Below are positions 25,121 to 40,499 of a stretch of DNA of 64,000 nucleotides, in pieces. A program made the position numbers and the translations under genes. Location of the stretch: positions 186,001-250,000 of IMG/VR virus record IMGVR_UViG_3300020202_000061. One strand, given 5' to 3'. The notes below the pieces were generated by a model. The model was given only the letters and a program-made list of their open reading frames with translations. It had not been told where the DNA came from and did no database searches. Position 1 is the first letter of the stretch; the number at the start of each line of letters is the position of its first letter.

Positions 25121-25157
25121 AATCAGATTCGAGGGCGGTTCGCCGCCCTTTGTGTTT

Positions 25158-25233: not shown

Positions 25234-25244
25234 AACATGTGTAA

Positions 25245-25606: not shown

Positions 25607-25609
25607 AAT

Positions 25610-25871: not shown

Positions 25872-26267
25872 ATGAAAATCAGACATCTCACAATGGGCTA
25901 TCAGGCATACTTCGTGCCGCGCACGGTCATCGACACGTTGGCCATAGGGTTTCCGCCGCGATTCCCCAAGTTTGATCCGCACCACGTGACCATCGTCTTT
26001 GGGGTGACCCAGCAGGAACCGCTCCCAGAGGGACTCGCGGAGATCAAGATCGTGGGCTATGCGAGTGACCGTAAGGGAATCGAGGCGTTCGTGTGCTCGG
26101 TGAACGGGACGGAGAAGCGTCCGGATGGTCAAACCTATCATATTACCTGGAGCTACGATCCTGCTCAGGGTTATGCGCCGAAGAACTCGAATGATCTGAT
26201 TCAGAAGTATGGCTGGGTCAAGGTTAATACGGGCGTGCGGTTCCACGCCCAAGCGAAATTCATTTAA
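25872..26267 (+). CDS. 2H phosphoesterase family protein
   Basis: two HxT motifs (HHVTI, YHITW) about 65 aa apart. Confidence 0.75.
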   Translation: MKIRHLTMGYQAYFVPRTVIDTLAIGFPPRFPKFDPHHVTIVFGVTQQEPLPEGLAEIKIVGYASDRKGIEAFVCSVNGTEKRPDGQTYHITWSYDPAQGYAPKNSNDLIQKYGWVKVNTGVRFHAQAKFI

Positions 26268-26689
26268 CGTTGCGGGCGTTGGAGCTTCTGCAAGTCCTGC
26301 GGAGCCAATTTCTCCACGGTGCCAATGGTGATGGAATTGCTAAATGCCTTCACTAGGCTTTCCAGATTGATCGCTCCGACCTCACTCAGCTTGGCCAAAA
26401 CACCCACGGAGACCTCTACGTCATGTAGTTCCACGTCGATCTCAACTTGTCCGGTCTTGGGATCGATATCCACGCTGATCTCCCGGATTTCTCCAGCGAT
26501 TCCTGCCTTCTGGTAGAGACCGAGGTATTTCTGCTTATAGACTTTCTCGATAACAATCTGGCGGTCGAAAATCATGTCGTTCTCGGCGTCGATGCGTGCC
26601 TGTTCATCGTCATCACGGATTGGCGGGATGATTTCCTGGGCTTCGGTGAGCCCAGCCAGTTTACGGATACGTTCGAGTTCCTTGTCCAT
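26264..26689 (-). CDS. late protein with RKLAGLTEA motif
   Basis: TAAATA 5 nt before ATG; MDKELERIRKLAGLTEAQE. Confidence 0.7.
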   Translation of the reverse strand: MDKELERIRKLAGLTEAQEIIPPIRDDDEQARIDAENDMIFDRQIVIEKVYKQKYLGLYQKAGIAGEIREISVDIDPKTGQVEIDVELHDVEVSVGVLAKLSEVGAINLESLVKAFSNSITIGTVEKLAPQDLQKLQRPQR

Positions 26690-26740
26690 GCTCATATTTA
26701 GGGCCTTGATTATTCCTTGGGTTTTGACTAATATTGGTTC

Positions 26741-27070
26741 ATGCCAGTTCAGGAAGTATATTGGGGTGTCCCCTATCAGATCATCGACGGTCGTCAGACC
26801 TACTTCGATATCTACGAGAGGAAGTGGCTGACCGAGGCCAAGGTGAACGGGAACAAGGGCAACGCGCTTCGTCTGAGAATCCACGAGCGCCAACCCGAGG
26901 ACCCACCCAGCACGTACTGGGGCTGGCTTCGTACGGACGATGACGCATACATAATGATCCAGCCGGTGAGGCTTTTCTTTGACATGTGCTTCCCGTACGG
27001 TCCGAAGATCGAAGAGGAAAAGGGTAAAGGTCGCGCCGTGAATCTTCACGTCGAGCCGTGGCCGGAGTAA
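26741..27070 (+). CDS. hypothetical protein
   Basis: divergent ORF. Confidence 0.55.
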   Translation: MPVQEVYWGVPYQIIDGRQTYFDIYERKWLTEAKVNGNKGNALRLRIHERQPEDPPSTYWGWLRTDDDAYIMIQPVRLFFDMCFPYGPKIEEEKGKGRAVNLHVEPWPE

Positions 27071-27137
27071 ATATGAGCATGATCCACGAGAATCACAAGG
27101 CAGGTTTCCAGTAGTGTAAACTACTGAGGAATCTGAA

Positions 27138-27794
27138 ATGTTCACTGCTGATTGGTCCGGTAACCTCGGACCGTGCCGCCTCGTCCGCCACACCGGGGAA
27201 ACCTGGAGCTACGAGAATCTCGACGCGCTGGTTCGCGACAACCACAACATCCTGATCAAGAATCTACTCTCGGACCGCCCTCCGCTACTGAGCGGGGTGC
27301 GCCCGAAGAACGAGTACGTCCGCATCGACGATCACCACGAGTATCGTCGCCGCATGATGAAGGACTACGGCTACGACCCATTCGCTCCGTGGGATCGTCC
27401 CTGGTACGTGGTTCTGGATGAACTCGACCTGATCGTGCCGCCCTGGAAGGTCCTGGAGCGTGCCTACGCCCTGCGTCTGTTCGACCGCTGGTATTGGCCC
27501 TGGTATACACCGGGTGTGGATCGCAAGACGCGCAAGCGCACCTACATGTTCCGTCAGGGCGTGGTGCCCGGCACCGGCCACAGCAGGGGTCGTCACCGCT
27601 GCTACATGCGCCGTCCTCACACCACGGCCGAGCGCCGTCAGTACGAGCGGGACCTTGTCGATGAAGATTTAGAGGATTTCCCCCAGCTTCGCGTGAGGAA
27701 TCGTCACCTGCGTCATTCCTATGACGATATCCCTCGCAACAAGCCTCGGAAGTCCTGGAAAAGCCAGCGCAAAACCCAGTACCGTCCGACTTGA
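27138..27794 (+). CDS. Arg-rich hypothetical protein
   Basis: GAGGA RBS; C-terminal SWK..RKTQY. Confidence 0.65.
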   Translation: MFTADWSGNLGPCRLVRHTGETWSYENLDALVRDNHNILIKNLLSDRPPLLSGVRPKNEYVRIDDHHEYRRRMMKDYGYDPFAPWDRPWYVVLDELDLIVPPWKVLERAYALRLFDRWYWPWYTPGVDRKTRKRTYMFRQGVVPGTGHSRGRHRCYMRRPHTTAERRQYERDLVDEDLEDFPQLRVRNRHLRHSYDDIPRNKPRKSWKSQRKTQYRPT

Positions 27795-27901
27795 CTTCTT
27801 GAAAAACCCCTCTATTTCAGGATTACACACGACACGAAATGAGCGCCTTTTCCAGGTTTTGACGGGGACCCGGAAAGGCGCTCTTCTTTCAAGGGGGAAA
27901 C

Positions 27902-28390
27902 GTGGAGATCGTCTATCAACAGGGCGACCTATTAGAAGCGCCAGAAACGGTTATCGCCCACGGGTGCAATGCCCAGGGTGCAATGGGGTCAGGAGTGGCC
28001 AAGGCGATTCGCGCAAAATATCCCAGCGTCTATCAGACGTATCGAGCCCATTATGAGAATCATAATCTCGGTTTGAAACTGGGTGATGTGATCTGGGTTG
28101 CCCAGACCGATGGCAAGACCATTGCCAACTGCATCACTCAACAACACTACGGCAACGATGGAAAGCGCTACGTCGATTACGACGCGGTGCGTCTGTGCAT
28201 GAAAGAGATCAACGGGGTTGGCCGATCCCTCCAGGAGCAGAAACGAAACTGGTGGGATGAGGTCGATACGTTCTTCCGATTCGCCATGCCTAAGATAGGT
28301 GCGGGACTTGGAGGTGGAAGTTGGGACGAAATCGCCAAGATTGTGGAAGAGGAAACCATTTGGGTGCAAGCCGTGGTGTATGAGATATGA
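27902..28390 (+). CDS. macro domain protein (ADP-ribose processing)
   Basis: IAHGCNAQGAMGSGVAKAI; MPKIGAGLGGG.W. Confidence 0.9.
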   Translation: MEIVYQQGDLLEAPETVIAHGCNAQGAMGSGVAKAIRAKYPSVYQTYRAHYENHNLGLKLGDVIWVAQTDGKTIANCITQQHYGNDGKRYVDYDAVRLCMKEINGVGRSLQEQKRNWWDEVDTFFRFAMPKIGAGLGGGSWDEIAKIVEEETIWVQAVVYEI

Positions 28391-28557
28391 GCAAGAAATT
28401 CACACTCACTGATGAACAGATCGATGCGATTCAGACCGAACTCGTTTATGCGCTGGATCGTCTGAGCGATGAACTGGAAAACTCCGATATTGATGAGATG
28501 GACGAACTCCAGATTCGAATCGCTGCGGTCAAAGAACTTCAAAAGGTGTTTGAATGA
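28387..28557 (+). CDS. small acidic protein (56 aa)
   Basis: fills the gap between macro and metK with overlaps at both ends. Confidence 0.55.
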   Translation: MSKKFTLTDEQIDAIQTELVYALDRLSDELENSDIDEMDELQIRIAAVKELQKVFE

Positions 28558-29657
28558 GTCAGGTCTGGACCAGCGAATGTGTGGCTCCGGGCCACCCCGA
28601 CAAGATCGCCGACCGTATCAGTGATGCGGTGGTGGACGAGGCCATGCGTGGGGACGTGAATTCACGTGTCGCTGTGGAAACCCTGGTGAAATCCGATACG
28701 GTGTATATCGCGGGTGAGATCACCACCAAGGCGGAACTCGACTACCAGCGAATCGTGCGCTCCACCCTGCGTGGTCTGGGTTATGGCGATCCCAAGTGGG
28801 GATTTCCAGCCGATGATGTGACGATTGTCACCAACATTAATGAGCAGGCTCCGAAGCTGCATCAATTGAGTCAGCATAAGGCGGGTGATCAAGGCATCAT
28901 GTTTGGATATGCCTGCACCGAGACGCTCGATTACATGCCATTACCGCTGGTGTTGGCACGAGAGATGCAAATTGAGATGCGTCTCTACTCTCAGCGCAAT
29001 CCTGGTCGTTTCGGTCCGGATGGCAAGTCTCAGGTCACGGTACGCTACTCCGATGAAGGACGCGTAAGTGCTGTGCCGTTGGTGTTGTTGTCGGTCTTGC
29101 ACTCATCTGAGGTGACCCGAGAAGAACTCGATCATCTGGGCGCGAACGTGTTCAAGCTCGCCATATTTAACCTCGGTCTGACTCGTGCGCAGACCGAGCA
29201 CACTCAGGTTCTGGTGAACCCAGACGGTCTGTGGACCCGTGGTGGTCCCCAGGTGGACGCAGGCGTAACCGGCCGCAAGATCATCGTGGACACTTATGGC
29301 GGTCGTGGCCGTCACGGTGGTGGCGCATTCTCAGGGAAGGACCCGAGCAAGCTAGATCGCACCGGAGCCTACGCCGCACGTTATCTGGCCAAACACATCT
29401 GTCGTCGATTCAAACTCCCGGAGGTGGAGGTCCAACTCGCCTACGTGATCGGTCAGGAACAGCCCGTGTCGATCTGGGTCTCTGGAATGGATGAGGTCGA
29501 AGCGCGAAAGGTCGTGCACGATCAGTTACCGGATTTATCCCCGAATGGACTGATCGAACGCTTTCAGTTGAAAACCCCAGGGAAGATGCCCATCTATTCC
29601 TGGTTGGCAAGTGGGGGACATTTTGGTATACCCGACCTGCCATGGGAGAAACTATGA
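28554..29657 (+). CDS. metK: S-adenosylmethionine synthetase
   Basis: GHPDKIAD, AGDQGIMFGYA, DGKSQV, TGRKIIVDTYGG..HGGGAFSGKDPSK. Confidence 0.95.
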   Translation: MSQVWTSECVAPGHPDKIADRISDAVVDEAMRGDVNSRVAVETLVKSDTVYIAGEITTKAELDYQRIVRSTLRGLGYGDPKWGFPADDVTIVTNINEQAPKLHQLSQHKAGDQGIMFGYACTETLDYMPLPLVLAREMQIEMRLYSQRNPGRFGPDGKSQVTVRYSDEGRVSAVPLVLLSVLHSSEVTREELDHLGANVFKLAIFNLGLTRAQTEHTQVLVNPDGLWTRGGPQVDAGVTGRKIIVDTYGGRGRHGGGAFSGKDPSKLDRTGAYAARYLAKHICRRFKLPEVEVQLAYVIGQEQPVSIWVSGMDEVEARKVVHDQLPDLSPNGLIERFQLKTPGKMPIYSWLASGGHFGIPDLPWEKL

Positions 29658-30235
29658 GTGAGATTTACTTTTCCACGGATATCGAATCCGATGGACCTAT
29701 TCCGGGACCCTACTCGATGTTTGCATTCGGGTGTGTTCCTATCTTGGAGAACGGCCAGATTCTACACGGTCGTGGATGGAACCTGAAACACCTGGAGGGT
29801 GCGAATCAGCATCCCGATACTATGGCGTTCTGGAATCGTCCAGAGAATGTCAAAGTCTACAAGCGCCTGCATGAGGCTCAGTTCGAACCCGAAGCAGCGA
29901 TGTTTCAGTTTTCCGATTGGGTGAAGAGCCTCTCGAAGCAGCACAACGCGACTCCGGTATTCGTGGCGTATCCGGCCGGGTTCGACTTCATGTTCGTTCT
30001 TTGGTATTTGAACCACTTCGTCGGAGAGTCGGTATTCTCGCATTCCGCTTTGGATATGAAAACCGCCGCATGGTCCTGGTTCAAGAACCGTGCGTTCCGC
30101 AAGGTCACCAAATCGTTCCTGCGAGAACACTGGCCCAGCGATCACGTCCATGATCATGATCCGGTCAATGATGCGCGTCAGCAGGCGGAGATATTTTCGT
30201 TGATGCTCCAACACCGTCAGAGGATAGCTGCGTGA
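29654..30235 (+). CDS. DEDDh 3'-5' exonuclease
   Basis: TDIESDGP, GFDF, HDPVNDA. Confidence 0.85.
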   Translation: MSEIYFSTDIESDGPIPGPYSMFAFGCVPILENGQILHGRGWNLKHLEGANQHPDTMAFWNRPENVKVYKRLHEAQFEPEAAMFQFSDWVKSLSKQHNATPVFVAYPAGFDFMFVLWYLNHFVGESVFSHSALDMKTAAWSWFKNRAFRKVTKSFLREHWPSDHVHDHDPVNDARQQAEIFSLMLQHRQRIAA

Positions 30236-30552
30236 AACTCCCACTAAGACGTGCCGGGTTTCGTGATTGTGCTGGAGGAGCATTTCGTTGTGTGGTGCCA
30301 GTCGATCTCAAAGCCAACAATAATCTTCGTCAACGCGTGATTCGCGTGCCACATCAGCACACGAAGTCCACCGTGATTGCTCCGTTCAACGAATACACAT
30401 TTAAGCATTCGGATCGCTACGCTGAAGAGCGCGATCTGGCAGAACTTGTCCATATCACACAATCATTCTTTGGTGAGCGTGATGACGAGGAGAGCGATAT
30501 CGAATCGGTCGATATCGAGTGGGGTAGTTACAATGACTTTGGAGATTCCTGA
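30232..30552 (+). CDS. hypothetical protein
   Basis: GTGA coupling. Confidence 0.5.
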   Translation: MKLPLRRAGFRDCAGGAFRCVVPVDLKANNNLRQRVIRVPHQHTKSTVIAPFNEYTFKHSDRYAEERDLAELVHITQSFFGERDDEESDIESVDIEWGSYNDFGDS

Positions 30553-30561
30553 GGGGGAAAC

Positions 30562-30774
30562 ATGCAGGAAACACTTTATGCTTTGATTGCGATTTTCTGG
30601 ATTCTACAACCGGATGGTTCGGTTGTGATGGAGGAAGCTATATCGGATTATTATTATCCGATGGAAGAATGTCTGGACCTCCAAAAGCAAATTCCTAAAT
30701 CTATGGCGATGGAGCCCGTCGCTCACGGTTCGAAGTCACAGTGCGTGCCGATTCAGGTGATTCCGGCGAACTAA
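30562..30774 (+). CDS. small protein with N-terminal hydrophobic segment and two Cys
   Basis: GGGGGA RBS. Confidence 0.5.
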   Translation: MQETLYALIAIFWILQPDGSVVMEEAISDYYYPMEECLDLQKQIPKSMAMEPVAHGSKSQCVPIQVIPAN

Positions 30775-30918
30775 CCGATCCAGAACGGGTCGGGCATAGG
30801 TCCAATAGAACCGCATATGACCGGACCACGAATAGGCATCGCGATCCGGGAATATTCTGGCGTATTTCTGTTTGAGTCGGGTAAGCGGGGTCAAGGGTTC
30901 CTCCGGAACCGCTCCCCC

Positions 30919-31956
30919 TTATTCGGCCGCTGCCTTCTGCTCGACGCGATCCCGGCCATACTGGATACCGGGCTTATTCGTGGCTGAGAAACGCTGCGAC
31001 TTGATCCTGGTCCACCCCTGAGGATCAATGTTCCGGAACCGGATTTGGTTCCCGAGGGTGTGGAACTTGTTGCCCTCGCTGTCGTAGAGCCGAATCTCCT
31101 CACCATCACCGAACAGAAACGATTCTTGATTGTACTTCGCACACAGGTAGATGGCGAACTTCAAAAACGCATTCAGGTTGAGTGTGCCCAGATTCCGTGT
31201 GGGTAGAACCAGAAACCGCTGCTCCTCATGAGGGCGATTCTCTTCCTTCTCTTGATACCCACCCATCACCGGGATATACCGGACTGCCTCCTGAGAGAGG
31301 TCGGTGCGAAGTTGGTGGGTGAGTCTCTTGTTGAGACGATCATTCTTGGGTTTATCCTGGACAAGACCACGCGCCTCGGGGCTACGCGAGGCCGAAATCG
31401 CGAAGAACGGAGTCCCTGCCTTGATCTTCTGCACGATACGTGAGGCACCCGCACCGGCCTCCATCAGACCAGCACGACGACGAATATCAGCGATTTCGAT
31501 GTCCTCGGCGGCCATCCGACCCGGACGCGGCGGCACACCGTGTTTGATGAAGCGCTCGATCCCGTCCTGATCAAGGATACGATGTTCCTCACCACGACCG
31601 ATGGTCGTGCGTGGTGCACGAGCCACGATGATCAGGCGTTGAATGCCTGGAATCTGATCGGCTAGAAACTTTGTGGCCCGACGCAGGTCCTTCCAATCAC
31701 GACCTTCCAGGTTCGAACCCACATCAGGTTTACGACGGTCGAACGCCAGACGCACCCAGCCGTGGCTGAACATCACGTCCAGTGTGACCGGGTCATAATC
31801 GCCCTGGATCGCATCGTCGAGTTCCTCAGGATCGACCCCGTAAACCTCAGGACGCTTTTGCACATCTCCGGTATGGCTGTTCGATCCGAACGGAATCGTC
31901 ACCAATTCCCCGGTTTTCGCGTTATACCAATGACGGTCGGACTGATACAAGCTCAT
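30919..31956 (-). CDS. late two-domain protein with internal RRRAGLMEA linker
   Basis: TAAATA 5 nt before ATG; C-domain GGYQE..EQRFLV..KYNQES pattern. Confidence 0.7.
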   Translation of the reverse strand: MSLYQSDRHWYNAKTGELVTIPFGSNSHTGDVQKRPEVYGVDPEELDDAIQGDYDPVTLDVMFSHGWVRLAFDRRKPDVGSNLEGRDWKDLRRATKFLADQIPGIQRLIIVARAPRTTIGRGEEHRILDQDGIERFIKHGVPPRPGRMAAEDIEIADIRRRAGLMEAGAGASRIVQKIKAGTPFFAISASRSPEARGLVQDKPKNDRLNKRLTHQLRTDLSQEAVRYIPVMGGYQEKEENRPHEEQRFLVLPTRNLGTLNLNAFLKFAIYLCAKYNQESFLFGDGEEIRLYDSEGNKFHTLGNQIRFRNIDPQGWTRIKSQRFSATNKPGIQYGRDRVEQKAAAE

Positions 31957-32027
31957 GAGGATATTTAGGAATTCCGCTTGACGGATACCTATCCGGGAGT
32001 TAAATTTAATCTAGGAGGAGAAATAGC

Positions 32028-32657
32028 ATGAATTTTCAGGATTACAACAAGATTCGAGCCAGTCTGAGATATTGGCTACTGGGGAGAAACTATTTCAAAG
32101 CACTGAAGGCGATGGAAGTCGGTCTGGAATACCATACGGGAACCCGCAAGAACGGGGCTCCGGAGTTTATCCATCAGGTCAGTCAGGTCCAGTACGCGAG
32201 AACCCTCGAATCCCAGCTACTCTATCCGGAGGATACGTTCTGCACGATTTTCCTCCACGACATTGTCGAGGATCACAAGTATCCACGATCCGGCATCAAA
32301 CAGTTCGGCGATTCGGTGTATCGAGCGGTCGAACTCATGACGGATGCGGATGAGACGGGTGAGGATAAAGCCCTGGCTGACTATTTCCGCGCTATGGGCT
32401 ACGATCCCATCGCAAGTTTCGCCAAGGGTTGTGACCGTGTGCACAACTTCCAGACCATGATGGGTGTGTTCAAGCCGGAGAAGAAGGAACGCTACATCCG
32501 GGAGGGGACCGACCTGATTATCCCGATGCTGAAAATCGCTCGCAAGCAATTCCCCGAGCAAGAGCAGGCATATCACAACGTCACGCATATTCTGAGGATG
32601 CAGATCGAACTGATCCAGTATTCCTTAACTTCGGAACTCCAGGAGACAGTTTCCTAA
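32028..32657 (+). CDS. HD-domain protein, RelA/SpoT-hydrolase (Mesh1)-like
   Basis: HTGTRKNG.PEFIH, FLHDIVED, KGCDRVHN. Confidence 0.85.
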   Translation: MNFQDYNKIRASLRYWLLGRNYFKALKAMEVGLEYHTGTRKNGAPEFIHQVSQVQYARTLESQLLYPEDTFCTIFLHDIVEDHKYPRSGIKQFGDSVYRAVELMTDADETGEDKALADYFRAMGYDPIASFAKGCDRVHNFQTMMGVFKPEKKERYIREGTDLIIPMLKIARKQFPEQEQAYHNVTHILRMQIELIQYSLTSELQETVS

Positions 32658-32698
32658 TCTCTTGACAAGGTTTGGGGTTCTGATATATACTCGGATAT

Positions 32699-32776
32699 GG
32701 CGGTGTACTGCTTAGCGGCCTAAAGCGGGTGTCTCTAAAATACTGATCGCGGGTTCGAATCCCGCCACCGCCGCCA
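32699..32776 (+). tRNA. amber suppressor tRNA (CTA anticodon)
   Basis: GGCGGTG/CACCGCC-G-CCA; GGTGT-CT-CTA-AA-ATACT; own promoter at 32662. Confidence 0.82.
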
Positions 32777-32790
32777 AGAAAGGAACTAGA

Positions 32791-33009
32791 ATGCCCTATC
32801 GCCGTCGTTCCGGTCTCAGTGCCGGAGATACAATTTTCGCCGGGATCAGTGCCGTCTGGATTGTTCTCTGGATCGCCTGCATTGCCGCGTGGATCACCCA
32901 CGTGATCACCTGCATTCAGACCGAGCAATGGGTATTGCTGATTGTGGGCGCACTTCTCGCTCCGATTGGGGTCATCCATGGCTGGGGTCTGTGGCTCGGG
33001 ATATTCTGA
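32791..33009 (+). CDS. small two-TM membrane protein
   Basis: hydrophobic; P.GVIHG. Confidence 0.65.
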   Translation: MPYRRRSGLSAGDTIFAGISAVWIVLWIACIAAWITHVITCIQTEQWVLLIVGALLAPIGVIHGWGLWLGIF

Positions 33010-33530
33010 TGGAAAACCGCAAAGGACTTCTCGCGCTGCTCCTGGCCCTGTTGGTCGGAGCTTGCACGAATCAACCCTATCCCCCGGTGACCCACCGGAT
33101 GCAGCCGAACTGGCAGCAGGTCTACCAACAGCAACACGGTCTGGTCTATGTGTGCGAGCCCTCCAGGGGCGTCAGCACCGGCCAGATCATTGGAACCCTT
33201 GGTGGGGCCGCAGCGGGCGGCTACATCGGCTCTGAGGCCATCGGCAGCAAGGCAGGCACCGCTGGTCTGGCTGTGCTTGGCGCGATCATCGGCAATCAAG
33301 CCGGTGCTGCGATGGACCAGCAGCAGAACTGTTACTACACCCAGGGTCCACAGCCCTACGCGGGCGCGGCCACACCCTACTATCTGCGGGAGCCCCAGGG
33401 CTTTGGTCCGGGCGGCCGTATCTGTCGAGAATTCGTCGAGGACGTGACCATGGTCCGTACCAACACGATCACCCAGGCCCACTACATCGCCTGCCAGGAT
33501 TCCCAGGGTTTCTGGAGAATCATGCAGTGA
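33009..33530 (+). CDS. glycine-zipper lipoprotein (17-kDa surface antigen-like)
   Basis: lipobox LVGAC; GTLGGAAAGGYIG; CREF...AC.D..G.W. Confidence 0.8.
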   Translation: MENRKGLLALLLALLVGACTNQPYPPVTHRMQPNWQQVYQQQHGLVYVCEPSRGVSTGQIIGTLGGAAAGGYIGSEAIGSKAGTAGLAVLGAIIGNQAGAAMDQQQNCYYTQGPQPYAGAATPYYLREPQGFGPGGRICREFVEDVTMVRTNTITQAHYIACQDSQGFWRIMQ

Positions 33531-33865
33531 CCGAAATGTATCCGAATCTGGAGAACCCGGCTGTAAACCCGGACGAGCTTCCATATCCGGATCAAAACGA
33601 GGTCTACCAGACCCGTGGCGGCCACAAGGCGCGATTCCTCATGGAATTGCCCAAACATTGTGTGCCGGGTGACGAGACAGTGACCCACAAGCGTTTCCTC
33701 TACGCGGTCGAAACCGGACCCGACTCGGGCTGCTACCAGTATCAAATCTGCCACGAGGACGGTACCCAATTCGGGGTCTCTCAGAGTGGCCCTCTTATGT
33801 TCGATATCATGCCGTTCGCCGATATTCGATGGGGTCGAACATGGCCGCAATGGCGAGGGGAATAG
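33527..33865 (+). CDS. hypothetical protein
   Basis: GTGA coupling. Confidence 0.5.
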   Translation: MTEMYPNLENPAVNPDELPYPDQNEVYQTRGGHKARFLMELPKHCVPGDETVTHKRFLYAVETGPDSGCYQYQICHEDGTQFGVSQSGPLMFDIMPFADIRWGRTWPQWRGE

Positions 33866-34155
33866 GCCGCACGCGTCTGCGTCTGGCCAGGATGATCGAG
33901 GCCAAACTCCGCGATCTCGGCCACTCTGTTCGTGTCGATCCCGCCCGACTTGATCCCGCCCAGGGTTATTGGCGAACGGATTCCCGTGCCGACGTGATGC
34001 GCTGGGAAGGTTGGTTCGAGCGTGAGATCGAACCCGGCCGATGGATGCGCCAGAGCATCTGTTCCTGGGATACCATGACGGACTGTGTCAGGGGTTTCGA
34101 GATTTGGCAGGACACCGGATGGTCGTGGGAAGTCGGCGCTCACAAAAACTCTTGA
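33850..34155 (+). CDS. hypothetical protein
   Basis: ORF ending at promoter 34152. Confidence 0.5.
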   Translation: MARGIGRTRLRLARMIEAKLRDLGHSVRVDPARLDPAQGYWRTDSRADVMRWEGWFEREIEPGRWMRQSICSWDTMTDCVRGFEIWQDTGWSWEVGAHKNS

Positions 34156-34275
34156 CAAACTCCTCGGTTTGACATAAGTATTCATCAACCGTTATCCCCG
34201 CCGAGTGCGGGTTGTGATTTGAAAGCGATTGTGCTGTCAACTTGGGACTATGAGGATCAAACCATGTTGTAGGAT

Positions 34276-34680
34276 TTGACTACCGACACGCGTAACCGGA
34301 GGGATTCTGATCCCCTTCGTCTCTATGCGATCCTCCGAGGCGATCTCGATATGACGCCCGGTAAGATTGCAGCGCAAGCGGGTCATGCATATCTCGACTC
34401 GTTTCTTGCCGCACGGACACTCCGTCCCGATACCATCGACCCTTACAAGACTCTGCACGGGATCAAGATCGCCATGAAGGCGAAGTCCCTGGTGCATCTG
34501 GAAGAGGCCCACGAGAAGCTCGTGCAGGCCGGGATTCCCTGTGCCCTGATCACCGATCTCGGATACTACGGGGTTCGTGAGGACCTCCTGGGCAAGGCCA
34601 CGATCACCGCGCTCGGTGTGGGTCCGGCTCGCCGTGGCGAGGTCGAGAAGATTTTCCATCGCTTCCGCTTGATGGACTGA
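34276..34680 (+). CDS. pth2: peptidyl-tRNA hydrolase Pth2
   Basis: LYAILRGDLDMTPGKIAAQAGHA..KIAMK..ITD.G..TALGVGP. Confidence 0.9.
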   Translation: MTTDTRNRRDSDPLRLYAILRGDLDMTPGKIAAQAGHAYLDSFLAARTLRPDTIDPYKTLHGIKIAMKAKSLVHLEEAHEKLVQAGIPCALITDLGYYGVREDLLGKATITALGVGPARRGEVEKIFHRFRLMD

Positions 34681-34691
34681 GGAGAACAATC

Positions 34692-35075
34692 ATGAAAACC
34701 AAAGAACTCATCCGCCAACTGATGGAGCAGGACCCTACCGGAGAAGAAGAGGTCTGCGTGAACAACGTGGACATCCACTTCGTCCAGCGTGAACCCGCCT
34801 GTCATGACGGTCACCATCAGGTATTGATCCGCGACGAATCCAATCCCTACTACAACATAATCGGCGCGGAGTATCGCTCCGAGGGGATCAAAATCAACAT
34901 CACGCCTCTCTCGATCCAGTGGGCCATCTATAACGATCCGAAAGTCCCGGTAAGTTACGTCGGTGATTACACCGAGGAGGATCACAAAGAACAGGTCGAG
35001 CAATGGCGTGCAGAGACCCGCAAGATTATCAAAGAGATTGCGGCCGAGAAACCCAAGCGTAAGAAAGGAAAGTGA
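34692..35075 (+). CDS. hypothetical protein
   Basis: GAGGAG RBS. Confidence 0.6.
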   Translation: MKTKELIRQLMEQDPTGEEEVCVNNVDIHFVQREPACHDGHHQVLIRDESNPYYNIIGAEYRSEGIKINITPLSIQWAIYNDPKVPVSYVGDYTEEDHKEQVEQWRAETRKIIKEIAAEKPKRKKGK

Positions 35076-35076
35076 C

Positions 35077-35445
35077 GTGAGCGATTTTACTATTCCGACT
35101 CCTGAGCAGGCTCAGTGGTTCATGAACCGCATCGAGCAGTTCTCCTCGAATCGTATTGAGGAAGTGTTCATCAACGAGACGGATGAAATGGTCCATCTGA
35201 CGACCTCTTATGAGGATTACTGTATGGGTTGTCATATGGGCACAGAGCGCGAAAGCTTTGGGATTCCATTTGGAATCTTCTTCTCTCATATCAATCCTAA
35301 ACAGTGGCTCGATGAGAGAAAGGCGCGTCTCGATGCTGAGAAGAAGGCTAAGGAAGAACAGTCTCGCCTGGAACAGCAGCGCATCATCGAGCGATCTGAG
35401 CGCGAAGAGTTGGCGCGACTCTCACGCAAATATAATGAGGCATAA
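35077..35445 (+). CDS. hypothetical protein
   Basis: co-directional ORF. Confidence 0.55.
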   Translation: MSDFTIPTPEQAQWFMNRIEQFSSNRIEEVFINETDEMVHLTTSYEDYCMGCHMGTERESFGIPFGIFFSHINPKQWLDERKARLDAEKKAKEEQSRLEQQRIIERSEREELARLSRKYNEA

Positions 35446-35781
35446 CCATGTCGTAGAAGTGCTCCTGCGATTCTAACGTTGCTTACGGCATCTTCAAGGA
35501 TGATCGACTCTACCGCGTCACGTTCAGTCGCGCGGTAGCCCGTCATATCCTTTCGTATTTCCCGGAACATCACGCGCGTCTGATCGACATCGTGATGGGT
35601 CCGGAACTCCAACCCGGTGAGACTCACGGTCTCCTCGGTATCGTCAATCGCCGAAACAACCGACTCCTCAGGGCCACGTGTATCCCTGGGGTTGCGGAGC
35701 TATTGACGGAAGACCCCTCGCGATACATCGCCAAGTGCTGGATCGCGGGAACTCAACCCCTAACCCAAGAGGAACTCAATC

Positions 35782-36159
35782 ATGACTAACAGCGAAATGA
35801 ATGCGAAGCTCCGTGATTTCTTCAAACTACCCGAACCCAAGGATAGAGAATCATATCTGGCCTGGGTGAAGGAGTGGAAGGCGCTCTACCGCGAGCTTAC
35901 CCTGTTCATCAGGAAACTCCGCACCACCCGTAAGCAGTACATCTGGAAGCGCACGGAGGCCAACGGTTACACCGATCCCAGCGGTAAGTTCATCCGTATG
36001 AACAAGAAGTACGAGCAGGTGGGGCCGAATCCCAACCACGATAGCTCGGCCAACTATTGGATCGCTCGGTTCTCGGCATCAGCCGCAAGTATGCTCGAAC
36101 TTCGTGCGATGCAAAAGGAAAATGCCCGGAAGCGTATGACAGAGAAAAGGGCTGCTTAA
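35782..36159 (+). CDS. hypothetical protein
   Basis: GAGGA RBS. Confidence 0.6.
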   Translation: MTNSEMNAKLRDFFKLPEPKDRESYLAWVKEWKALYRELTLFIRKLRTTRKQYIWKRTEANGYTDPSGKFIRMNKKYEQVGPNPNHDSSANYWIARFSASAASMLELRAMQKENARKRMTEKRAA

Positions 36160-36482
36160 GGGGTGCAAAATAGGGGTTATAAATATTTTTCTTCAAACGA
36201 ATCACATCCAAGTATTTGTGATCCCTCATGTTCCTAAATGTCCAGATAGCGCTAAATTGACGTTATCTGGACATTTTTGCACCCATTTGTAACCCCATGA
36301 AATCCAGGTATTGAATAAATTCAAAACTCTGTTACATCTGGTGAATAGTGGTGGGCCGTAAACAGGGGTCGCCAGAGAGCAATCCATCCAACCTGTGGAA
36401 AACTCTTGACAAACCCTAGGGTTGACAGTATGTTTCTCGGGTAACGAACGGGAATTGATCTCGTTTAACCTGTGGGGGAACC

Positions 36483-37727
36483 ATGTCTGCACCTTTCGAA
36501 AAGGACCTCGACGTTTTGTTCGAGGAATTGAACAAGCGTGAAATACCGGAAGTCGATCCTGCGTTGGGGTATGCTCGTACCTCAAAGCTAACGGTCGGCA
36601 AACTTAGGCAGTATTTTCCGGAGATCGATGATCTTACCTGGAAGAAGCTGGTGTCCGGCAAGATCGAGGACTACTTCACCAAACGTGCACACGATCAAGA
36701 TTTTGGTATCGTTCTTCTATTTGATGCTTGGTACGAGCATCAGCGTTACGTCGCGTCGGATTGGCTCTACACGGTGATGGAGTCGATGGAGGATGGAACC
36801 TACAAGGCAAAGGTCGATCCCATCATCATTGGTTTGCTCGACGGCTACGCCTATCATCTGGCCGGTCGCCATCGTACCGTAGCTACTGTTGCCACTGGTA
36901 AGAGCTACGTTCACAACTACCAGATCATCAACTTCGACAGCTATGAAGAAATGCGGGAGTTCTACGGACACACGCACACCCGTCGTGCTGCGAACACTAA
37001 CACCAAGAACACGTTCTGGCTCGACAAGACCACATGGAAGATGACCGAACGTTTCGTGGACAAGGTCGTCTCGGCTGTGAAGGCTGTTGTCGTTCTGAAC
37101 ATGGACCCGCGCACTGGCTTCACCAAGGACATGCTGATGTCGGATCGCAAGTTTTACAAGGACATCCTGCCGACCTATAAGAAGGCGGCCGAAGCGATCT
37201 ACGAAATTCTGGAGAACGGTGAGCGTGATATTCTCAAGGGTCTGAGCTACGCCGGTCGTTTGGGTTTTATGCTCGTCGCAATGCGCTATCAACCAGCCAA
37301 GGCGTCGGCTCTTCTCATGACGTTGGCCAATCCTCGTCATTTGTCTGAGGATACGCCTGCGTGGTTCATGAATCGTGTGCTCAAGGATTTGAACAAGCCC
37401 ATCGATCCGGTTATTCTCAAAGCCGGTCGTGGCTATTCCACAGGTGTCGGTCAGCAGATCGAGCATGCCAGTGAGTTTTCGGTTCTCTGGTTCCGTTACT
37501 GCAAGCAGGTGACGATGAAGCGATACATCGTTCCGCCGGAACTCGTCAACGCCCCGATTTTTATCGAGGGTGCGCCTGCTCAGCATCAGCAGGGTCGTGA
37601 GCACTACGCGGTTCGTCTCTCGAAGAAAGATGAAGCCAAACAAACATTAGCCAATCGTATGGCCAGGGTTCTCGGAGCGCGTAAGAAGATGATGACTCAG
37701 GCGAAGCGTCTGCAAGCAGCCGAGTAA
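36483..37727 (+). CDS. 414-aa protein with ParB-like (GRHR) motif
   Basis: own promoter (36406) and terminator (37747); LAGRHRTVA. Confidence 0.65.
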   Translation: MSAPFEKDLDVLFEELNKREIPEVDPALGYARTSKLTVGKLRQYFPEIDDLTWKKLVSGKIEDYFTKRAHDQDFGIVLLFDAWYEHQRYVASDWLYTVMESMEDGTYKAKVDPIIIGLLDGYAYHLAGRHRTVATVATGKSYVHNYQIINFDSYEEMREFYGHTHTRRAANTNTKNTFWLDKTTWKMTERFVDKVVSAVKAVVVLNMDPRTGFTKDMLMSDRKFYKDILPTYKKAAEAIYEILENGERDILKGLSYAGRLGFMLVAMRYQPAKASALLMTLANPRHLSEDTPAWFMNRVLKDLNKPIDPVILKAGRGYSTGVGQQIEHASEFSVLWFRYCKQVTMKRYIVPPELVNAPIFIEGAPAQHQQGREHYAVRLSKKDEAKQTLANRMARVLGARKKMMTQAKRLQAAE

Positions 37728-37746
37728 CGTTGGATCGACAACAGAG

Positions 37747-37778
37747 AACCCCCGGCATTTTCTGCCGGGGGTTTTTCA
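37747..37778 (+). terminator. intrinsic terminator
   Basis: AACCCCCGGCA-TTTTC-TGCCGGGGGTTTTT. Confidence 0.75.
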
Positions 37779-37974
37779 TTGGACAATATGGTTTACAGTC
37801 ATGGTTAGTATTCGGGTAGTATAATAGATATCTGTCCATTTACAATACTCAGAGATTTCCACTTAGACTGCATAATTGTGACCGATATGCCACGATCATT
37901 TCACACCATTTCTGGAAATTCTTGACAACCTCTGGATTTCCCCGATATACTCCTGAACAGGAAGGGAGAACCAC

Positions 37975-38382
37975 ATGGCTGAAACACAAGCGGCTCAACC
38001 GAGCCATACTCTGCGAAACATCACGCTTGGCATTTTGCTGATCGGTGCGGTCGCAGGCTCAGTGCTAGGAACCCTCAAGGGGAAAGAGAAGTTCGATGAG
38101 TTTGTGGACGCACGGGTCCAGGCTCGATTCGAGGAACTCTCCAAGAACAACGTGATGGTGGACAAGAACGCCGCCGTTATGACCACGGTCTGGTCCAGTT
38201 CGGACGCGAAAGAGCCGGTGCGTCGAACCATGGCGTTGGACGCGGTCAAATGCCAGGAACTCAAGGAATCCAACACCAAGGCCAGTGCCACCAGTACTCT
38301 CTCGGTGGACTGTCTGCCCGTGGATTCCCTATTCGGGGCGGCTCCGGCTCCGTCCGTAACAACGGCACCAGCCACCAACTGA
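37975..38382 (+). CDS. single-TM membrane-anchored protein
   Basis: N-terminal TM; promoter at 37922. Confidence 0.65.
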   Translation: MAETQAAQPSHTLRNITLGILLIGAVAGSVLGTLKGKEKFDEFVDARVQARFEELSKNNVMVDKNAAVMTTVWSSSDAKEPVRRTMALDAVKCQELKESNTKASATSTLSVDCLPVDSLFGAAPAPSVTTAPATN

Positions 38383-38421
38383 TCGTCCCTCGGGGCGAAA
38401 CCCTGACAACAGGAGTTCGCT

Positions 38422-38970
38422 ATGTCTACGACGACAATCGTAGCGGGGATGTTGCAGTTTCTGCACCCGCTGTTCTTTGATACGACCATCGAGATTAATC
38501 GGGCGGAGATCGAATGTCTGGCTACGAACATCTACTTCGAAGCAGCAGCCGAAGAACGCCTTGGGAAAACCGCCGTCGCCCACGTCACGTTGAATCGTCT
38601 GCGCGATCCCGCATACGAACACAGCGTTTGCAACGTGGTCGAGGAATCGTTCGCCCCTGGCACGAAATCATGCCAGTTTTCCTGGACGTGTGACGGAAAA
38701 TCCGACGTGGTGCCGGTGGATACCAAAGCCGGGGCTAGGGTCTACCAGGAGTGTGTGGAAGAGGCGATCCTCGCCTACTTCGGGCTCACCCCGGACCCCA
38801 CGCAGGGGGCGACCTACTACTACGCGTATGAGTTGGTCACCCCGCATTGGGCATCCAAATTCAAAGAGGTTGCGGTGATCGGCGGTCACCGATTCATGGC
38901 CGACCAAAACGATCTCCGTCGTTACAATAATCCGGTCGAATCCTTACTGGTTCGGGCCAGCTATCCTTGA
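38422..38970 (+). CDS. cell wall hydrolase (SleB/Hydrolase_2)
   Basis: CLATNIYFEA..AVAHVTLNR..CQFSW..IGGHRF. Confidence 0.9.
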   Translation: MSTTTIVAGMLQFLHPLFFDTTIEINRAEIECLATNIYFEAAAEERLGKTAVAHVTLNRLRDPAYEHSVCNVVEESFAPGTKSCQFSWTCDGKSDVVPVDTKAGARVYQECVEEAILAYFGLTPDPTQGATYYYAYELVTPHWASKFKEVAVIGGHRFMADQNDLRRYNNPVESLLVRASYP

Positions 38971-39018
38971 CAAACCCTGGGGTTTCTGGTAGGATCGCGG
39001 AAATCCCAGGAGTCTTTC

Positions 39019-39255
39019 ATGACGTTTACCCGCGAGCAGGTCGATGCCATCACCATCGGTACGATGATCACCAGAGGTATCGATGACCGTTGGAGTGATC
39101 CTCATCCGGTTGTGAGTATTCACGCCAAGCAAAATGACATCGAGGGCAAGCTGTTCGTCTGTGGTTACACCACCTACGGCGAAGATGCTCAGATGAGTTT
39201 CTCCATCAAGGAAGGCGATCCCACGGATTTTCGCCATTACAGGATCGGCGAATGA
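39019..39255 (+). CDS. hypothetical protein
   Basis: AGGAG RBS after promoter 38967. Confidence 0.6.
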   Translation: MTFTREQVDAITIGTMITRGIDDRWSDPHPVVSIHAKQNDIEGKLFVCGYTTYGEDAQMSFSIKEGDPTDFRHYRIGE

Positions 39256-40499
39256 CCCAACCCTTTCCATATCCAGTTCGCCGGGTACTGGCGCGTCTGA
39301 ACCACGCGGGGTTCGAGGCACGTGTGGCGGGCGGCGCAGTTCGTGATCTTCTGCTGGGCCAGACTCCGAAGGATTACGATGTGGCGACCACGGCACGGCC
39401 CGAACAGGTTGTGAAACTGTTCGAACAATGCGGGCTCCAGGTGATCCCCACCGGTATCTTTCACGGAACAGTCACGGTAGTTGTGCCGGACGATGAGCCG
39501 GGCACCCCGACGAACCTCGTCGAGAACGAGGACCTCCGTTTCATGCAGATCGAGATCACCACGTTGCGGGTGGATCGGGAAACCGATGGCCGCCACGCCG
39601 TGGTCGAATTCACCGACGACTGGGAGGCCGACGCCGCCCGCCGAGACTTCACGATCAATGCGATGTTCATGGACGCCGAGGGTGAGGTCTACGACTTCTT
39701 CCACGGCCAAGAGGACCTGGAACATTCGGTGATCCGGTTCGTCGGCAACGCGGATGAGCGCATTCAGGAGGATTACCTCCGTATCTTGCGATTCTATCGG
39801 TTCGCAGCACGCTTCGGCAACAACGACATGTGTCCGATGATGAGCGACCGCGAAGCTATCCGCCGGAACCTCGCCGGGCTCAAACAGATCAGCGGTGAGC
39901 GCATCTGGATGGAACTGACCAAACTGATCCGGTTGCCCGGCGCGAGCATGGCCCTCTACTGCATGTGCCTGGATGGTGTGCATGAGGCTATTGACCTGTC
40001 GATGATCCGGACTGCCGAGTTCATCAACATCCGTTATCATACGGATGATCCGATCACGTGTTTGGTCGGAGCTTGCTCGGCCGACCGTATGCCCCTGGCC
40101 GAGGGCTATCAAACCCTCATGGACACTCTGTGGCATCGCTACAAGGTCAGCAAGGTTGAGGTCGCCCGAGCCCAGTTTCTGATCGCCCATCGTGAACCGG
40201 GACGGTTTCAGTCGCTCCAGGACTATCTGCGGCTGATCACCCAGCAGGACCCGAAGAGCCAGGAGTTCGCAAAGGAATCCGCGCAGTTCCTGGCACTGCT
40301 GCATGATCGACCGGGGATTTCCACGACCATCGCGGTTTGGACAATCCCAACGTTTCCTCTGACCGGGAAGGACTTGATCCAACAGGGTATCCTGCCCGGC
40401 GCGGATATGGGCCGAATGTTGAAACGGGCCAAGGTCTTTTGGATCGATTCCCAATACACCCTTACCACGGAGGAATTGGTAAATTTAGTGAGAACCTGA
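39252..40499 (+). CDS. cca: CCA-adding tRNA nucleotidyltransferase (class II)
   Basis: GGAVRDLLLG..PKDYDVAT, RRDFTINAM, DYLRILRFYRF, SGERI. Confidence 0.9.
   Translation: MTQPFPYPVRRVLARLNHAGFEARVAGGAVRDLLLGQTPKDYDVATTARPEQVVKLFEQCGLQVIPTGIFHGTVTVVVPDDEPGTPTNLVENEDLRFMQIEITTLRVDRETDGRHAVVEFTDDWEADAARRDFTINAMFMDAEGEVYDFFHGQEDLEHSVIRFVGNADERIQEDYLRILRFYRFAARFGNNDMCPMMSDREAIRRNLAGLKQISGERIWMELTKLIRLPGASMALYCMCLDGVHEAIDLSMIRTAEFINIRYHTDDPITCLVGACSADRMPLAEGYQTLMDTLWHRYKVSKVEVARAQFLIAHREPGRFQSLQDYLRLITQQDPKSQEFAKESAQFLALLHDRPGISTTIAVWTIPTFPLTGKDLIQQGILPGADMGRMLKRAKVFWIDSQYTLTTEELVNLVRT

What the first reader, a model, noticed from the sequence alone, without database searches (positions are those of the whole stretch)
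32699..32776. Amber suppressor tRNA in a genome that still uses TAG as stop
Seen: complete cloverleaf with CT-CTA-AA loop, G73 and CCA, and a dedicated promoter (32662), directly behind the HD-hydrolase gene. TAG ends several convincing genes (656, 14260, 17538, 47606, 55177), so the code is not globally reassigned. One natural readthrough candidate is TAG at 47604-47606, followed immediately in frame by ATG47607. Inference: conditional or partial readthrough.
Basis: partly seen in the sequence, partly recalled or inferred. Interest (0 to 1): 0.65.

Follow-up and report, generated by a model that had tools for sequence, protein, structure and literature searches.

The report
Amber suppressor tRNA in standard-code jumbo phage
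A giant soil phage that ends about one gene in eight with TAG also carries a well-conserved tRNA that reads TAG as an amino acid; a few cultured giant phages do the same, and nobody yet knows why.

Summary
Window 32699-32776 (+) is a real tRNA with anticodon CUA, G73, an encoded CCA and a near-consensus sigma-70-type promoter.

The window is part of a 347.5-kb soil virus record with 54 tRNAs, a tmRNA and an RNase P RNA. The genome uses the standard code:
- Coding density and coding score fall when TAG is read as sense.
- 61 of 472 predicted genes end in TAG.
- At orthologous gene ends in a relative that also has the tRNA, TAG swaps with TAA and TGA.

I found no recoded gene, no RF2, and no GlnRS/GluRS, TrpRS/TyrRS or LysRS-class synthetase.

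The tRNA is not a relic. A tRNA(CUA) sits behind the same HD gene in five phage lineages. Its stems covary, its loop CUCUAAA never varies, and it diverges at the same rate as sense tRNAs.

The cultured jumbo phages RsoM2USA, Phosso and (by its paper) XacN1 show the same unexplained pairing of a CUA tRNA with TAG stops. This is therefore a new member of a known but unexplained kind.

Most likely mechanism: a host-charged suppressor gives partial, untargeted UAG readthrough. What the phage gains is still inference.

The parts
32662..32691 (+). Sigma-70-type promoter of the tRNA: TTGACA, spacer, TG-n-TATATACT. The inferred transcription start lies a few bases before the tRNA 5' end.
   Evidence: 11 of 12 matches, joint best in 24001-44000; one of 4 perfect sites in 347 kb against 0.05 expected. 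The same motif stands before the tRNA in L016 and in the loose end of the X3 contig.
32699..32776 (+). tRNA(CUA), an amber-suppressor-type elongator tRNA, 78 nt, G73, encoded CCA.
   Evidence: ARAGORN. (Rfam RF00005, 53.1 bits). (cloverleaf); 17 of 21 pairs show compensatory changes across 8 phage tRNA(CUA) genes; identical in an independent soil assembly.
32733..32739 (+). Anticodon loop CUCUAAA (anticodon CUA at 32735-32737; U33, A37, A38). It is invariant in all related copies.
   Evidence: Alignments A2 and A3. A ninth tRNA(CUA), in IMG/VR fragment G001, has the same whole anticodon arm.
32708..32709 (+). CU insertion between position 9 and the D stem. It is specific to this lineage and can lengthen the D helix.
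   Evidence: shown as an insert against the Rfam model. (absent from L016). (the minimum-energy fold has a longer D helix). (present in the X2 contig; no gaps in X3).
32028..32657 (+). HD_4 protein, a RelA/SpoT hydrolase domain on its own (small-alarmone-hydrolase-like). It is the conserved upstream neighbour and ends in TAA here but TAG in L016.
   Evidence: families. (homologues). (tRNA(CUA) directly 3' of it in five lineages). (stop-codon swap).
32791..33009 (+). A 72-aa hydrophobic protein gene starting 15 nt after the CCA, probably co-transcribed with the tRNA. A glycine-zipper protein gene follows at 33009-33530.
   Evidence: The same gene order is seen in L016. Neither gene has an in-frame TAG.

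Best explanation
This is a working amber-suppressor tRNA gene of a standard-code jumbo phage.

Proposed mechanism:
1. It is transcribed from its own strong sigma-70-type promoter, so probably by host RNA polymerase from early in infection.
2. It is processed by RNase P; the phage even encodes an RNase P RNA.
3. It is aminoacylated by a host synthetase, since no matching phage synthetase was found. The amino acid is unknown. Lys or Gln are the usual fates of CUA tRNAs, with Trp as an outsider.
4. It competes with host RF1 at UAG.

The result would be partial, untargeted readthrough of UAG on both phage and host messages, not a change of code. The phage can tolerate this because UAG is its rarest stop and is scarce in long genes.

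My favoured benefit is buffering of amber nonsense. With this codon usage, UAG is by far the largest one-step nonsense target and also the cheapest stop to weaken. This last step is inference.

Shown: the gene, its conservation, the standard code, and the absence of recoded targets.
Inferred: expression, charging, readthrough and the benefit.
For: The gene is real.

It is under selection:
- A tRNA(CUA) sits directly 3' of the HD gene in five lineages whose HD proteins are 54-81% identical to the window's.
- 17 of 21 stem pairs have compensatory changes, while the loop CUCUAAA is invariant.
- It diverges like sense tRNAs: 0.94 against 0.72-1.0 versus L016, and 0.72 against 0.60-0.79 versus L017.
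- The promoter is conserved in L016 and is rare in the genome.

The code is standard:
- Density 0.867 under code 11 against 0.849 with TAG as sense.
- Stops are TGA 252, TAA 159, TAG 61.
- Stops swap at orthologous ends, including the HD gene itself.

There is no code-change kit:
- No PCRF domain, so no RF1 or RF2.
- No GlnRS/GluRS, TrpRS/TyrRS or Lys/Asp/Asn-class synthetase.

Readthrough looks tolerable: TAG ends 5 of 83 genes of 300 aa or more, against 13% of all genes.

Nonsense target size: sense codons one step from TAG number 18267, from TAA 8872 and from TGA 5975. By transitions alone the figures are 4871, 1017 and 2551.

Same situation in cultured jumbo phages:
- RsoM2USA has one CUA tRNA and Phosso has two.
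- XacN1 has two CUA tRNAs and 18 amber stops, and its authors found no targets (PMC5852040).
- RsoM2USA paper: PMC8504454.

CUA tRNAs tend to be charged with Lys or Gln in E. coli (PMC1483225).
Against: - There are no expression data. No RNA run holds the region.
- Charging and the inserted amino acid are untested. Acceptor stems and discriminators differ among the copies (G73 or A73; G1-C72 or C1-G72), so they may not all carry the same residue.
- The CU insert could weaken this particular copy.
- The genome shows no sign of adapting to a suppressor. Back-up stops are not enriched after TAG: a second stop within 3 codons follows 8% of TAG genes, against 18% for TAA and 20% for TGA. There is no bias in the base after TAG.
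- The buffering benefit rests on a target-size argument, not on a test.
- The IMG/VR record is probably about 54 kb short of the full genome, so a recoded gene outside it cannot be excluded.
Confidence: 0.6

Rival explanations
1. Partial or incipient code-15 use. A few phage genes, for example late or lysis genes, carry in-frame TAG and need the tRNA, as in recoded gut phages. The reader's pair 47298-47855 would be one such gene.
For: - Recoded phages often keep early genes in the standard code and carry a CUA tRNA, and standard-code relatives with suppressors are proposed as precursors (bioRxiv 10.1101/2021.08.26.457843).
- Ten TAG-ended genes are followed in frame by another predicted gene.
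- Small membrane-protein genes lie directly behind the tRNA.
- About 54 kb of the genome may be missing from the record.
Against: - In-frame continuation is no commoner after TAG (10 of 61) than after TAA (19 of 159).
- Nine of the ten junctions have a Shine-Dalgarno-like run and their own start within 0-9 nt (my reading); only G000 70354 is less clear.
- No family spans a junction, and the thymidylate kinase behind one TAG is complete on its own.
- Density and coding score fall when TAG is read as sense.
- TAG swaps freely with TAA and TGA at orthologous ends.
- No RF2.
- GC is 54.5% and TAG is not depleted, unlike the proposed precursor state.
Confidence: 0.08
2. A host-directed weapon. Early, strong expression of a suppressor extends host proteins that end in UAG, or overloads host ribosome rescue. 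This helps shut the host off or disables a host defence. The phage covers its own needs with its tmRNA, its GGQ-only release factor and PTH2.
For: - A strong host-type promoter.
- The phage encodes an alpha-type tmRNA, a release-factor GGQ domain without a codon-reading domain and PTH2.
- The suppressor is kept although the phage itself has no visible use for it.
Against: - The phage ends 61 of its own genes in TAG, with no back-up stops, so it would be hit as well.
- The host and its stop-codon usage are unknown.
- No such mechanism has been shown for any phage in the papers read.
Confidence: 0.15
3. A non-decoding or counter-defence role. The tRNA would serve as a decoy or spare substrate for host tRNA-targeting toxins (anticodon nucleases, or CCA-end pyrophosphorylating RelA/SpoT-type toxins), in concert with the adjacent HD hydrolase and the phage tRNA-repair genes.
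For: - Conserved adjacency to an HD_4 (RelA/SpoT hydrolase) gene in five lineages.
- The genome carries a polynucleotide kinase/phosphatase, an RNA ligase, a CCA-adding enzyme and PTH2.
Against: - The only part of the tRNA that never varies is the decoding loop CUCUAAA, while the bodies, discriminators and acceptor stems vary. That points to selection on reading UAG.
- HD homologues occur without the tRNA (L020, L023, L025-L027).
- Suppressors occur without the HD neighbour (RsoM2USA, Phosso). The adjacency may be only shared gene order.
Confidence: 0.1
4. A decaying or neutral passenger. The gene would be a mutated sense tRNA (for example CUU, CUG or CCA changed to CUA) with no function, tolerated because it is weakly expressed or uncharged.
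For: - The window copy has an odd CU insert.
- The genome holds another tRNA-like gene with a defective 6-nt loop (G000 178288-178364).
- Nearest-neighbour similarity to the phage's tRNA-Lys(CUU) is only marginal, 0.69-0.72.
Against: - The CUA anticodon and the whole loop are conserved in five syntenic lineages and in three cultured-phage copies, with compensatory stem changes.
- Its divergence equals that of sense tRNAs.
- It has a conserved strong promoter.
Confidence: 0.04

Closest known systems
CUA suppressor tRNAs of cultured standard-code jumbo phages: Xanthomonas phage XacN1, Ralstonia phage RsoM2USA, Sinorhizobium phage Phosso
   Same: - Soil phages of 340-470 kb with dozens of tRNAs covering all or nearly all amino acids.
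- XacN1 is also reported to carry tRNA-processing genes: CCA-adding enzyme, PNKP and peptidyl-tRNA hydrolase.
- One or two tRNA(CUA) genes.
- For XacN1, TAG is reported as a stop (18 genes) and no readthrough target was found (PMC5852040). RsoM2USA paper: PMC8504454.
- I located the RsoM2USA and Phosso copies; they share the loop CUCUAAA.
   Different: - The window's phage is only distantly related. The HD protein is 39-43% identical, and two other proteins have no tblastn match in 50,697 phage records.
- In RsoM2USA and Phosso the tRNA is not next to the HD gene.
- Here TAG ends about 13% of genes, against 18 of 592 in XacN1.
- I did not examine the XacN1 sequences with tools.
Code-15 (TAG to Gln) recoded phages: crAss-like, Lak and other gut phages
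   Same: A phage-encoded tRNA(CUA), presumed to be charged by a host enzyme. Standard-code relatives that carry suppressors are described.
   Different: - Recoded phages have in-frame TAG in structural and lysis genes, low coding density under code 11, low GC with depleted TAG stops, and sometimes RF2.
- None of these holds here.
Laboratory amber suppressors (E. coli supF/supE type, and engineered tRNA-CUA)
   Same: - A canonical elongator body with anticodon CUA, flanked by U33 and A37 A38.
- From my own knowledge, CUCUAAA is also the supF loop. The heptamer occurs 18 times in a paper on engineered amber-suppressor tRNA-Tyr variants (PMC6337575, seen in the list; I did not read it).
- CUA tRNAs are prone to Lys or Gln charging (PMC1483225).
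   Different: Laboratory suppressors are single mutants of host tRNAs with a known identity. This is a natural, long-conserved phage gene of unknown identity, with a CU insert in the D region.
tRNA-Pyl (ARAGORN's label)
   Same: Only the CUA anticodon.
   Different: It has the G18 G19 and T-psi-C-type loops, a 9-nt D loop, a 5-bp anticodon stem and a 4-nt variable loop. By my knowledge of tRNA-Pyl, none of these fits the Pyl type.

Membership tests
tRNA (Rfam RF00005), canonical class I elongator | A cloverleaf with a 7-bp acceptor stem, D arm with GG, 7-nt anticodon loop with U33, T arm with a UUCGAAU-type loop, and a score above the family cut-off. | tested here: met
   53.1 bits against a cut-off of 29. 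ARAGORN cloverleaf. The one departure is a 2-nt insert after position 9.
tRNA (Rfam RF00005), canonical class I elongator | The structure is maintained in evolution through compensatory changes. | tested here: met
   17 of 21 pairs have changes on both sides across 8 sequences.
Nonsense (amber) suppressor tRNA | An anticodon complementary to UAG, in a loop context compatible with decoding. | tested here: met
   CUA at 32735-32737 in loop CUCUAAA. The loop is invariant in 9 phage copies.
Nonsense (amber) suppressor tRNA | It is expressed, aminoacylated, and inserts an amino acid at UAG. | not testable with these tools
   No RNA run holds the region. Needs a reporter assay and mass spectrometry.
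Stop-codon-recoded (code 15) phage system | In-frame TAG inside genes, and higher coding density when TAG is read as sense. | tested here: not met
   Density 0.867 under code 11 against 0.849 with TAG as sense, and the coding score falls. No excess of coding extensions behind TAG. No split families.
Stop-codon-recoded (code 15) phage system | TAG is lost or depleted as a true stop. | tested here: not met
   61 of 472 genes end in TAG. TAG aligns with TAA or TGA at orthologous ends.
Stop-codon-recoded (code 15) phage system | A code-change module: RF2 and/or a matching aminoacyl-tRNA synthetase near the suppressor. | tested here: not met
   PCRF domain: 0 hits. The only RF-1 domain is a 143-aa GGQ-only protein. 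No tRNA-synt_1c, 1b or 2 families. The only synthetase-like gene is a GlyRS-like core.
Standard-code jumbo phages with an orphan suppressor tRNA (XacN1 / RsoM2USA kind) | A genome over 300 kb with a near-complete tRNA set and tRNA-maturation or repair genes. | tested here: met
   347.5 kb (a 401-kb contig exists). 54 tRNAs and a tmRNA. CCA-adding enzyme, PTH2, PNK/phosphatase, RNA ligase and RNase P RNA.
Standard-code jumbo phages with an orphan suppressor tRNA (XacN1 / RsoM2USA kind) | A CUA tRNA together with TAG-terminated genes and no identifiable readthrough target. | tested here: met
   Compare PMC5852040.
tRNA-Pyl | By my knowledge of the family: a compact core (short D loop without GG, 3-nt variable loop, 6-bp anticodon stem, one base between acceptor and D stems) together with pylS/pylBCD genes. 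| tested here: not met
   The structural features are absent. I did not search for pyl genes specifically. The only class II synthetase core found is GlyRS-like.

The most novel reading that the evidence does not exclude
The suppressor would not be a way-station towards recoding. It would be a stable, selected part of a jumbo-phage translation take-over kit. An early-expressed amber suppressor, held in place for a long time alongside normal TAG stops, would either rescue the commonest nonsense lesions (CAG or TGG changed to TAG, for example from deamination, whether spontaneous or caused by a host defence) or derail termination on host messages. The phage's own tmRNA, GGQ-only release factor and PTH2 would clear the resulting stalled ribosomes. 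That would make leaky termination a deliberate phage strategy.
Probability: 0.2. Interest if true: 0.7.

Novelty: new member of a known kind. Interest (0 to 1): 0.4.

Why it matters
Suppressor tRNAs in phages are usually read as markers of stop-codon recoding, or as a brief step towards it. Here the suppressor and ordinary TAG stops have coexisted across five lineages whose neighbouring HD proteins are only 54-81% identical to the window's. The decoding loop is frozen, and the genome shows no sign of adapting to it. That argues for a stable function other than recoding.

The same puzzle is on record for cultured phages (XacN1, RsoM2USA, Phosso), where it could be tested directly.

There is also a practical point. 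Annotation pipelines that switch to code 15 on seeing a CUA tRNA would mis-annotate such genomes. Natural, host-charged amber suppressors with varied bodies are also of interest as parts for genetic-code expansion.

Tried and rejected
1. Global or partial TAG recoding: rejected. Evidence is coding density and score, extensions behind stops, back-up stops, PHROG scans of both halves of the TAG-joined pairs (the upstream ORF of the pair at G000 59724-60098 was left out because it crosses a locus boundary) and orthologous stop comparison.

2. The apparent excess of TAGATG junctions (4 of 61 TAG genes against 1 of 159 TAA genes): explained. TAG cannot overlap a start codon, whereas TAATG and ATGA can.

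3. The only relatives found were the window's own record and contig, so comparison was not possible.

4. A phage-encoded release factor or cognate synthetase: none found. The RF-1 hit is a GGQ-only protein. The class II hit is a GlyRS-like core next to the tRNA-Gly genes, and its expected acceptor-stem identity does not fit this tRNA.

5. Amino-acid identity from similarity. The phage's tRNA-Lys(CUU) is first or joint first for all five syntenic suppressors, but only by 0.00-0.02 identity. That is too weak to use.

6. Close relatives:
- Megablast against phage records: none.
- An exact 29-mer in IMG/VR: none.
- The HD protein by peptide seeds in IMG/VR: none.
- Two other proteins by tblastn against phage records: none.
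- Relatives came only from the word search on the HD protein plus contig look-ups.
- One look-up returned genes but no DNA.
- The L016 record is not held for whole-record searches, so no genome-wide orthologue comparison could be made.

7. RNA evidence: no RNA run holds the stretch.

8. No alternative genetic code was named to any translation or search tool. TAG as sense was used only inside my own ORF-density scripts.

Full report
**What is there**

ARAGORN finds 30 tRNA genes in the window, all on the + strand. One has anticodon CTA, at 32699-32776. Rfam's tRNA model scores it 53.1 bits against a cut-off of 29.

From the sequence, it is a canonical elongator tRNA:
- acceptor stem GGCGGUG/CACCGCC, G73, encoded CCA;
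- D loop with GG, T loop UUCGAAU;
- 5-bp anticodon stem, loop CUCUAAA, 4-nt variable loop.

The one oddity is a CU insert (32708-32709) between position 9 and the D stem. ARAGORN's label tRNA-Pyl is only its default name for CUA; the Pyl-type core is absent.

A TTGACA / TG-n-TATATACT promoter (32662-32691) ends a few bases before the tRNA. It is the joint best sigma-70-type match in 20 kb. It is one of four perfect matches in the whole genome, where shuffles give 0.05.

Contigs of an independent soil study reproduce 32036-32758 exactly, and a cave-metagenome contig covers the tRNA with two differences and no gaps. The anticodon is therefore not an assembly error.

**The genome**

The window is bases 186001-250000 of a 347,504-bp IMG/VR virus record from soil, 54.5% GC. 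The identical HD protein also lies on a 401,308-bp contig, so the record is probably incomplete.

The genome carries:
- 54 tRNAs and an alpha-type permuted tmRNA;
- an RNase P RNA;
- a CCA-adding enzyme, PTH2, a polynucleotide kinase/phosphatase and an RNA ligase;
- a 143-aa protein that is only the GGQ domain of a release factor.

**Is TAG still a stop? Yes.**

I used a simple codon-usage gene finder.
- It gives 472 genes covering 86.7% of the genome under code 11, with stops TGA 252, TAA 159 and TAG 61.
- Reading TAG as sense lowers both density (84.9%) and total coding score.
- Coding-like in-frame extensions follow 10 of 61 TAG stops, 22 of 159 TAA stops and 17 of 252 TGA stops.
- A predicted gene follows in frame with no other stop after 10 of 61 TAG, 19 of 159 TAA and 17 of 252 TGA.
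- As I read the contexts printed, nine of the ten TAG cases show a Shine-Dalgarno-like purine run and their own start within 0-9 nt. The tenth (G000 70354) has a 39-nt gap and no clear one.
- PHROG scans of the halves of these pairs show no family split across a TAG (one upstream ORF, G000 59724-60098, was not scanned). The thymidylate kinase behind one TAG matches its profile from residue 2.
- In L016, a relative that also has the tRNA, orthologous proteins end flush. TAG in one genome aligns with TGA twice, TAA once and TAG once in the other. The HD gene beside the tRNA ends in TAA here and TAG there.

There is no PCRF domain, so no RF1 or RF2. There is no Glu/Gln, Trp/Tyr or Lys/Asp/Asn-class synthetase. 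The only synthetase-like gene is a GlyRS-like core next to the tRNA-Gly pair.

The genome also shows no adaptation to a suppressor. Back-up stops are not enriched after TAG, and the base after TAG is unbiased. TAG is scarcer among long genes: 5 of 83 genes of 300 aa or more.

Of the five TAG-ended genes cited:
- 656 and 47606 are supported;
- 17538 overlaps a better ORF;
- 14260 and 55177 have negative coding scores.

The proposed readthrough site (TAG 47604, ATG 47607) looks like an ordinary coupled stop-start junction. TAGATG is the tightest junction TAG allows, because TAG cannot overlap a start as TAATG and ATGA do. That accounts for the small excess of such junctions. The upstream ORF has no homologue other than itself, so a fused relative could not be sought.

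**The tRNA is conserved**

Homologues of the HD protein lie on many large contigs. A tRNA(CUA) sits directly behind the HD gene in five lineages:
- the window;
- L016, from a 409-kb contig, HD 81% identical;
- L017/18/19, HD 59%;
- L024, HD 57%;
- L022, HD 54%.

More distant HD loci lack the tRNA (L020/21, L023, L025-27).

The copies differ in acceptor stem and discriminator (G73 or A73) but keep the loop CUCUAAA. L016 also keeps the promoter. When the tRNA(CUA) genes I located in Ralstonia phage RsoM2USA and Sinorhizobium phage Phosso are added, 17 of 21 stem pairs show compensatory changes.

Between the window and L016 or L017, the suppressor is as conserved as the sense tRNAs: 0.94 against 0.72-1.0, and 0.72 against 0.60-0.79. 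An unrelated low-GC IMG/VR fragment has yet another tRNA(CUA) with the identical anticodon arm on a different body, again with high coding density under code 11. Selection therefore acts on decoding UAG.

**What is known**

Recoded gut phages use CUA tRNAs. Suppressors in standard-code relatives have been read as a step towards recoding in low-GC, TAG-poor genomes (bioRxiv 10.1101/2021.08.26.457843). That description does not fit this genome.

The better match is the cultured soil jumbo phages.
- XacN1 has two CUA tRNAs and 18 amber stops, and in-silico readthrough found nothing (PMC5852040).
- RsoM2USA has one CUA tRNA (PMC8504454).
- Atu_ph07 has a UCA suppressor (PMC6102473).

The phenomenon is therefore on record but unexplained. 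This window adds an uncultured, only distantly related clade. It also adds evidence that the state is stable and selected.

**Mechanism**

I take it to be a host-charged suppressor, expressed from a host-type promoter, that competes with RF1 and causes partial, untargeted UAG readthrough.

The amino acid is open. CUA tRNAs tend to be taken by LysRS or GlnRS (PMC1483225). The alpha-type tmRNA hints at an alphaproteobacterial host; from my own knowledge these often lack GlnRS, which would favour Lys. Similarity to the phage's tRNA-Lys(CUU) is only marginal.

For the benefit I favour nonsense buffering. With this codon usage, 18267 sense codons lie one step from TAG, against 8872 for TAA and 5975 for TGA, while TAG is the least used stop.

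The rivals are host-directed disruption of termination, a counter-defence or decoy role tied to the HD hydrolase and the tRNA-repair genes, hidden partial recoding, and a neutral relic. I weigh each in the Rival explanations section. None is excluded by experiment.

**Verdict**

This is a new member of a known, unexplained kind, of moderate interest.

Noticed in passing
window 10428-10778 (+): A bacterial class A RNase P RNA (146.6 bits, full-length model) encoded in the phage among the tRNA genes.
   Followed up: no
G000 128216-128552 (L007:8208-8520): A permuted, alpha-type tmRNA (RF01849 108.5 bits, RF04321 113.6 bits) with tag ANDNFVADEGFRMAA ending in TAA. It hints at an alphaproteobacterial host.
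   Followed up: partly
G000 299355-299786 (L013:9355-9786): A 143-aa protein made only of the RF-1 (GGQ) domain, with no codon-reading PCRF domain. It resembles a codon-independent ribosome-rescue or release factor of the ArfB/PrfH type.
   Followed up: partly
window 14680-15429 (+): A 249-aa GlyRS-like class II catalytic core that is too short to hold the anticodon-binding domain of a full GlyRS (no such domain was detected). It lies just upstream of tRNA-Gly(GCC) and tRNA-Gly(UCC).
   Followed up: partly
window 4845-4934; G000 133337-133428, 271227-271312, 275948-276033: tRNAs of 86-92 nt, a length that implies a long (class II-like) variable arm, carry anticodons for Arg (CCG), Ile (UAU) and Thr (CGU, UGU). 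That shape is unusual for these isotypes.
   Followed up: no
G000 178288-178364 (L009:18288-18364): A tRNA-like gene with a 6-nt anticodon loop GUUAAA, C1-G72 and G73, as in the RsoM2USA and Phosso_a suppressors. It may be a decayed second suppressor.
   Followed up: partly
window 28554-29657 (+) and 30919-31956 (-): A SAM synthetase (MetK) and a SAM-lyase-like gene lie about 1.3 kb apart, and both are conserved in L016.
   Followed up: no
window 32028-32657 (+): The HD neighbour is a stand-alone RelA/SpoT hydrolase domain (small-alarmone-hydrolase-like). It is widespread on huge phage contigs and in Rak2-like phages.
   Followed up: partly
window 34276-34680, 39252-40499; G000 120694-122076, 169353-170960: A tRNA maintenance and repair set: PTH2, CCA-adding enzyme, polynucleotide kinase/phosphatase and RNA ligase.
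   Followed up: no
whole record G000: The identical HD protein and the identical 102-aa ORF are on a 401,308-bp contig, so the 347,504-bp IMG/VR record is probably about 54 kb short of the genome.
   Followed up: no
L036:1043-1118 (-), IMG/VR fragment G001 (76.8 kb, GC 38.9%): Another phage tRNA(CUA) with its own TTGACA promoter and the same anticodon arm GGUGU-CUCUAAA-AUACU on an unrelated body. The fragment's stops are TAA 59, TAG 4, TGA 0.
   Followed up: partly
G000 185463, 218662, 223922, 288780 (+): Four perfect TTGACA-N16-19-TATAMT promoters, all on the + strand and within or beside the tRNA-rich part of the genome.
   Followed up: no
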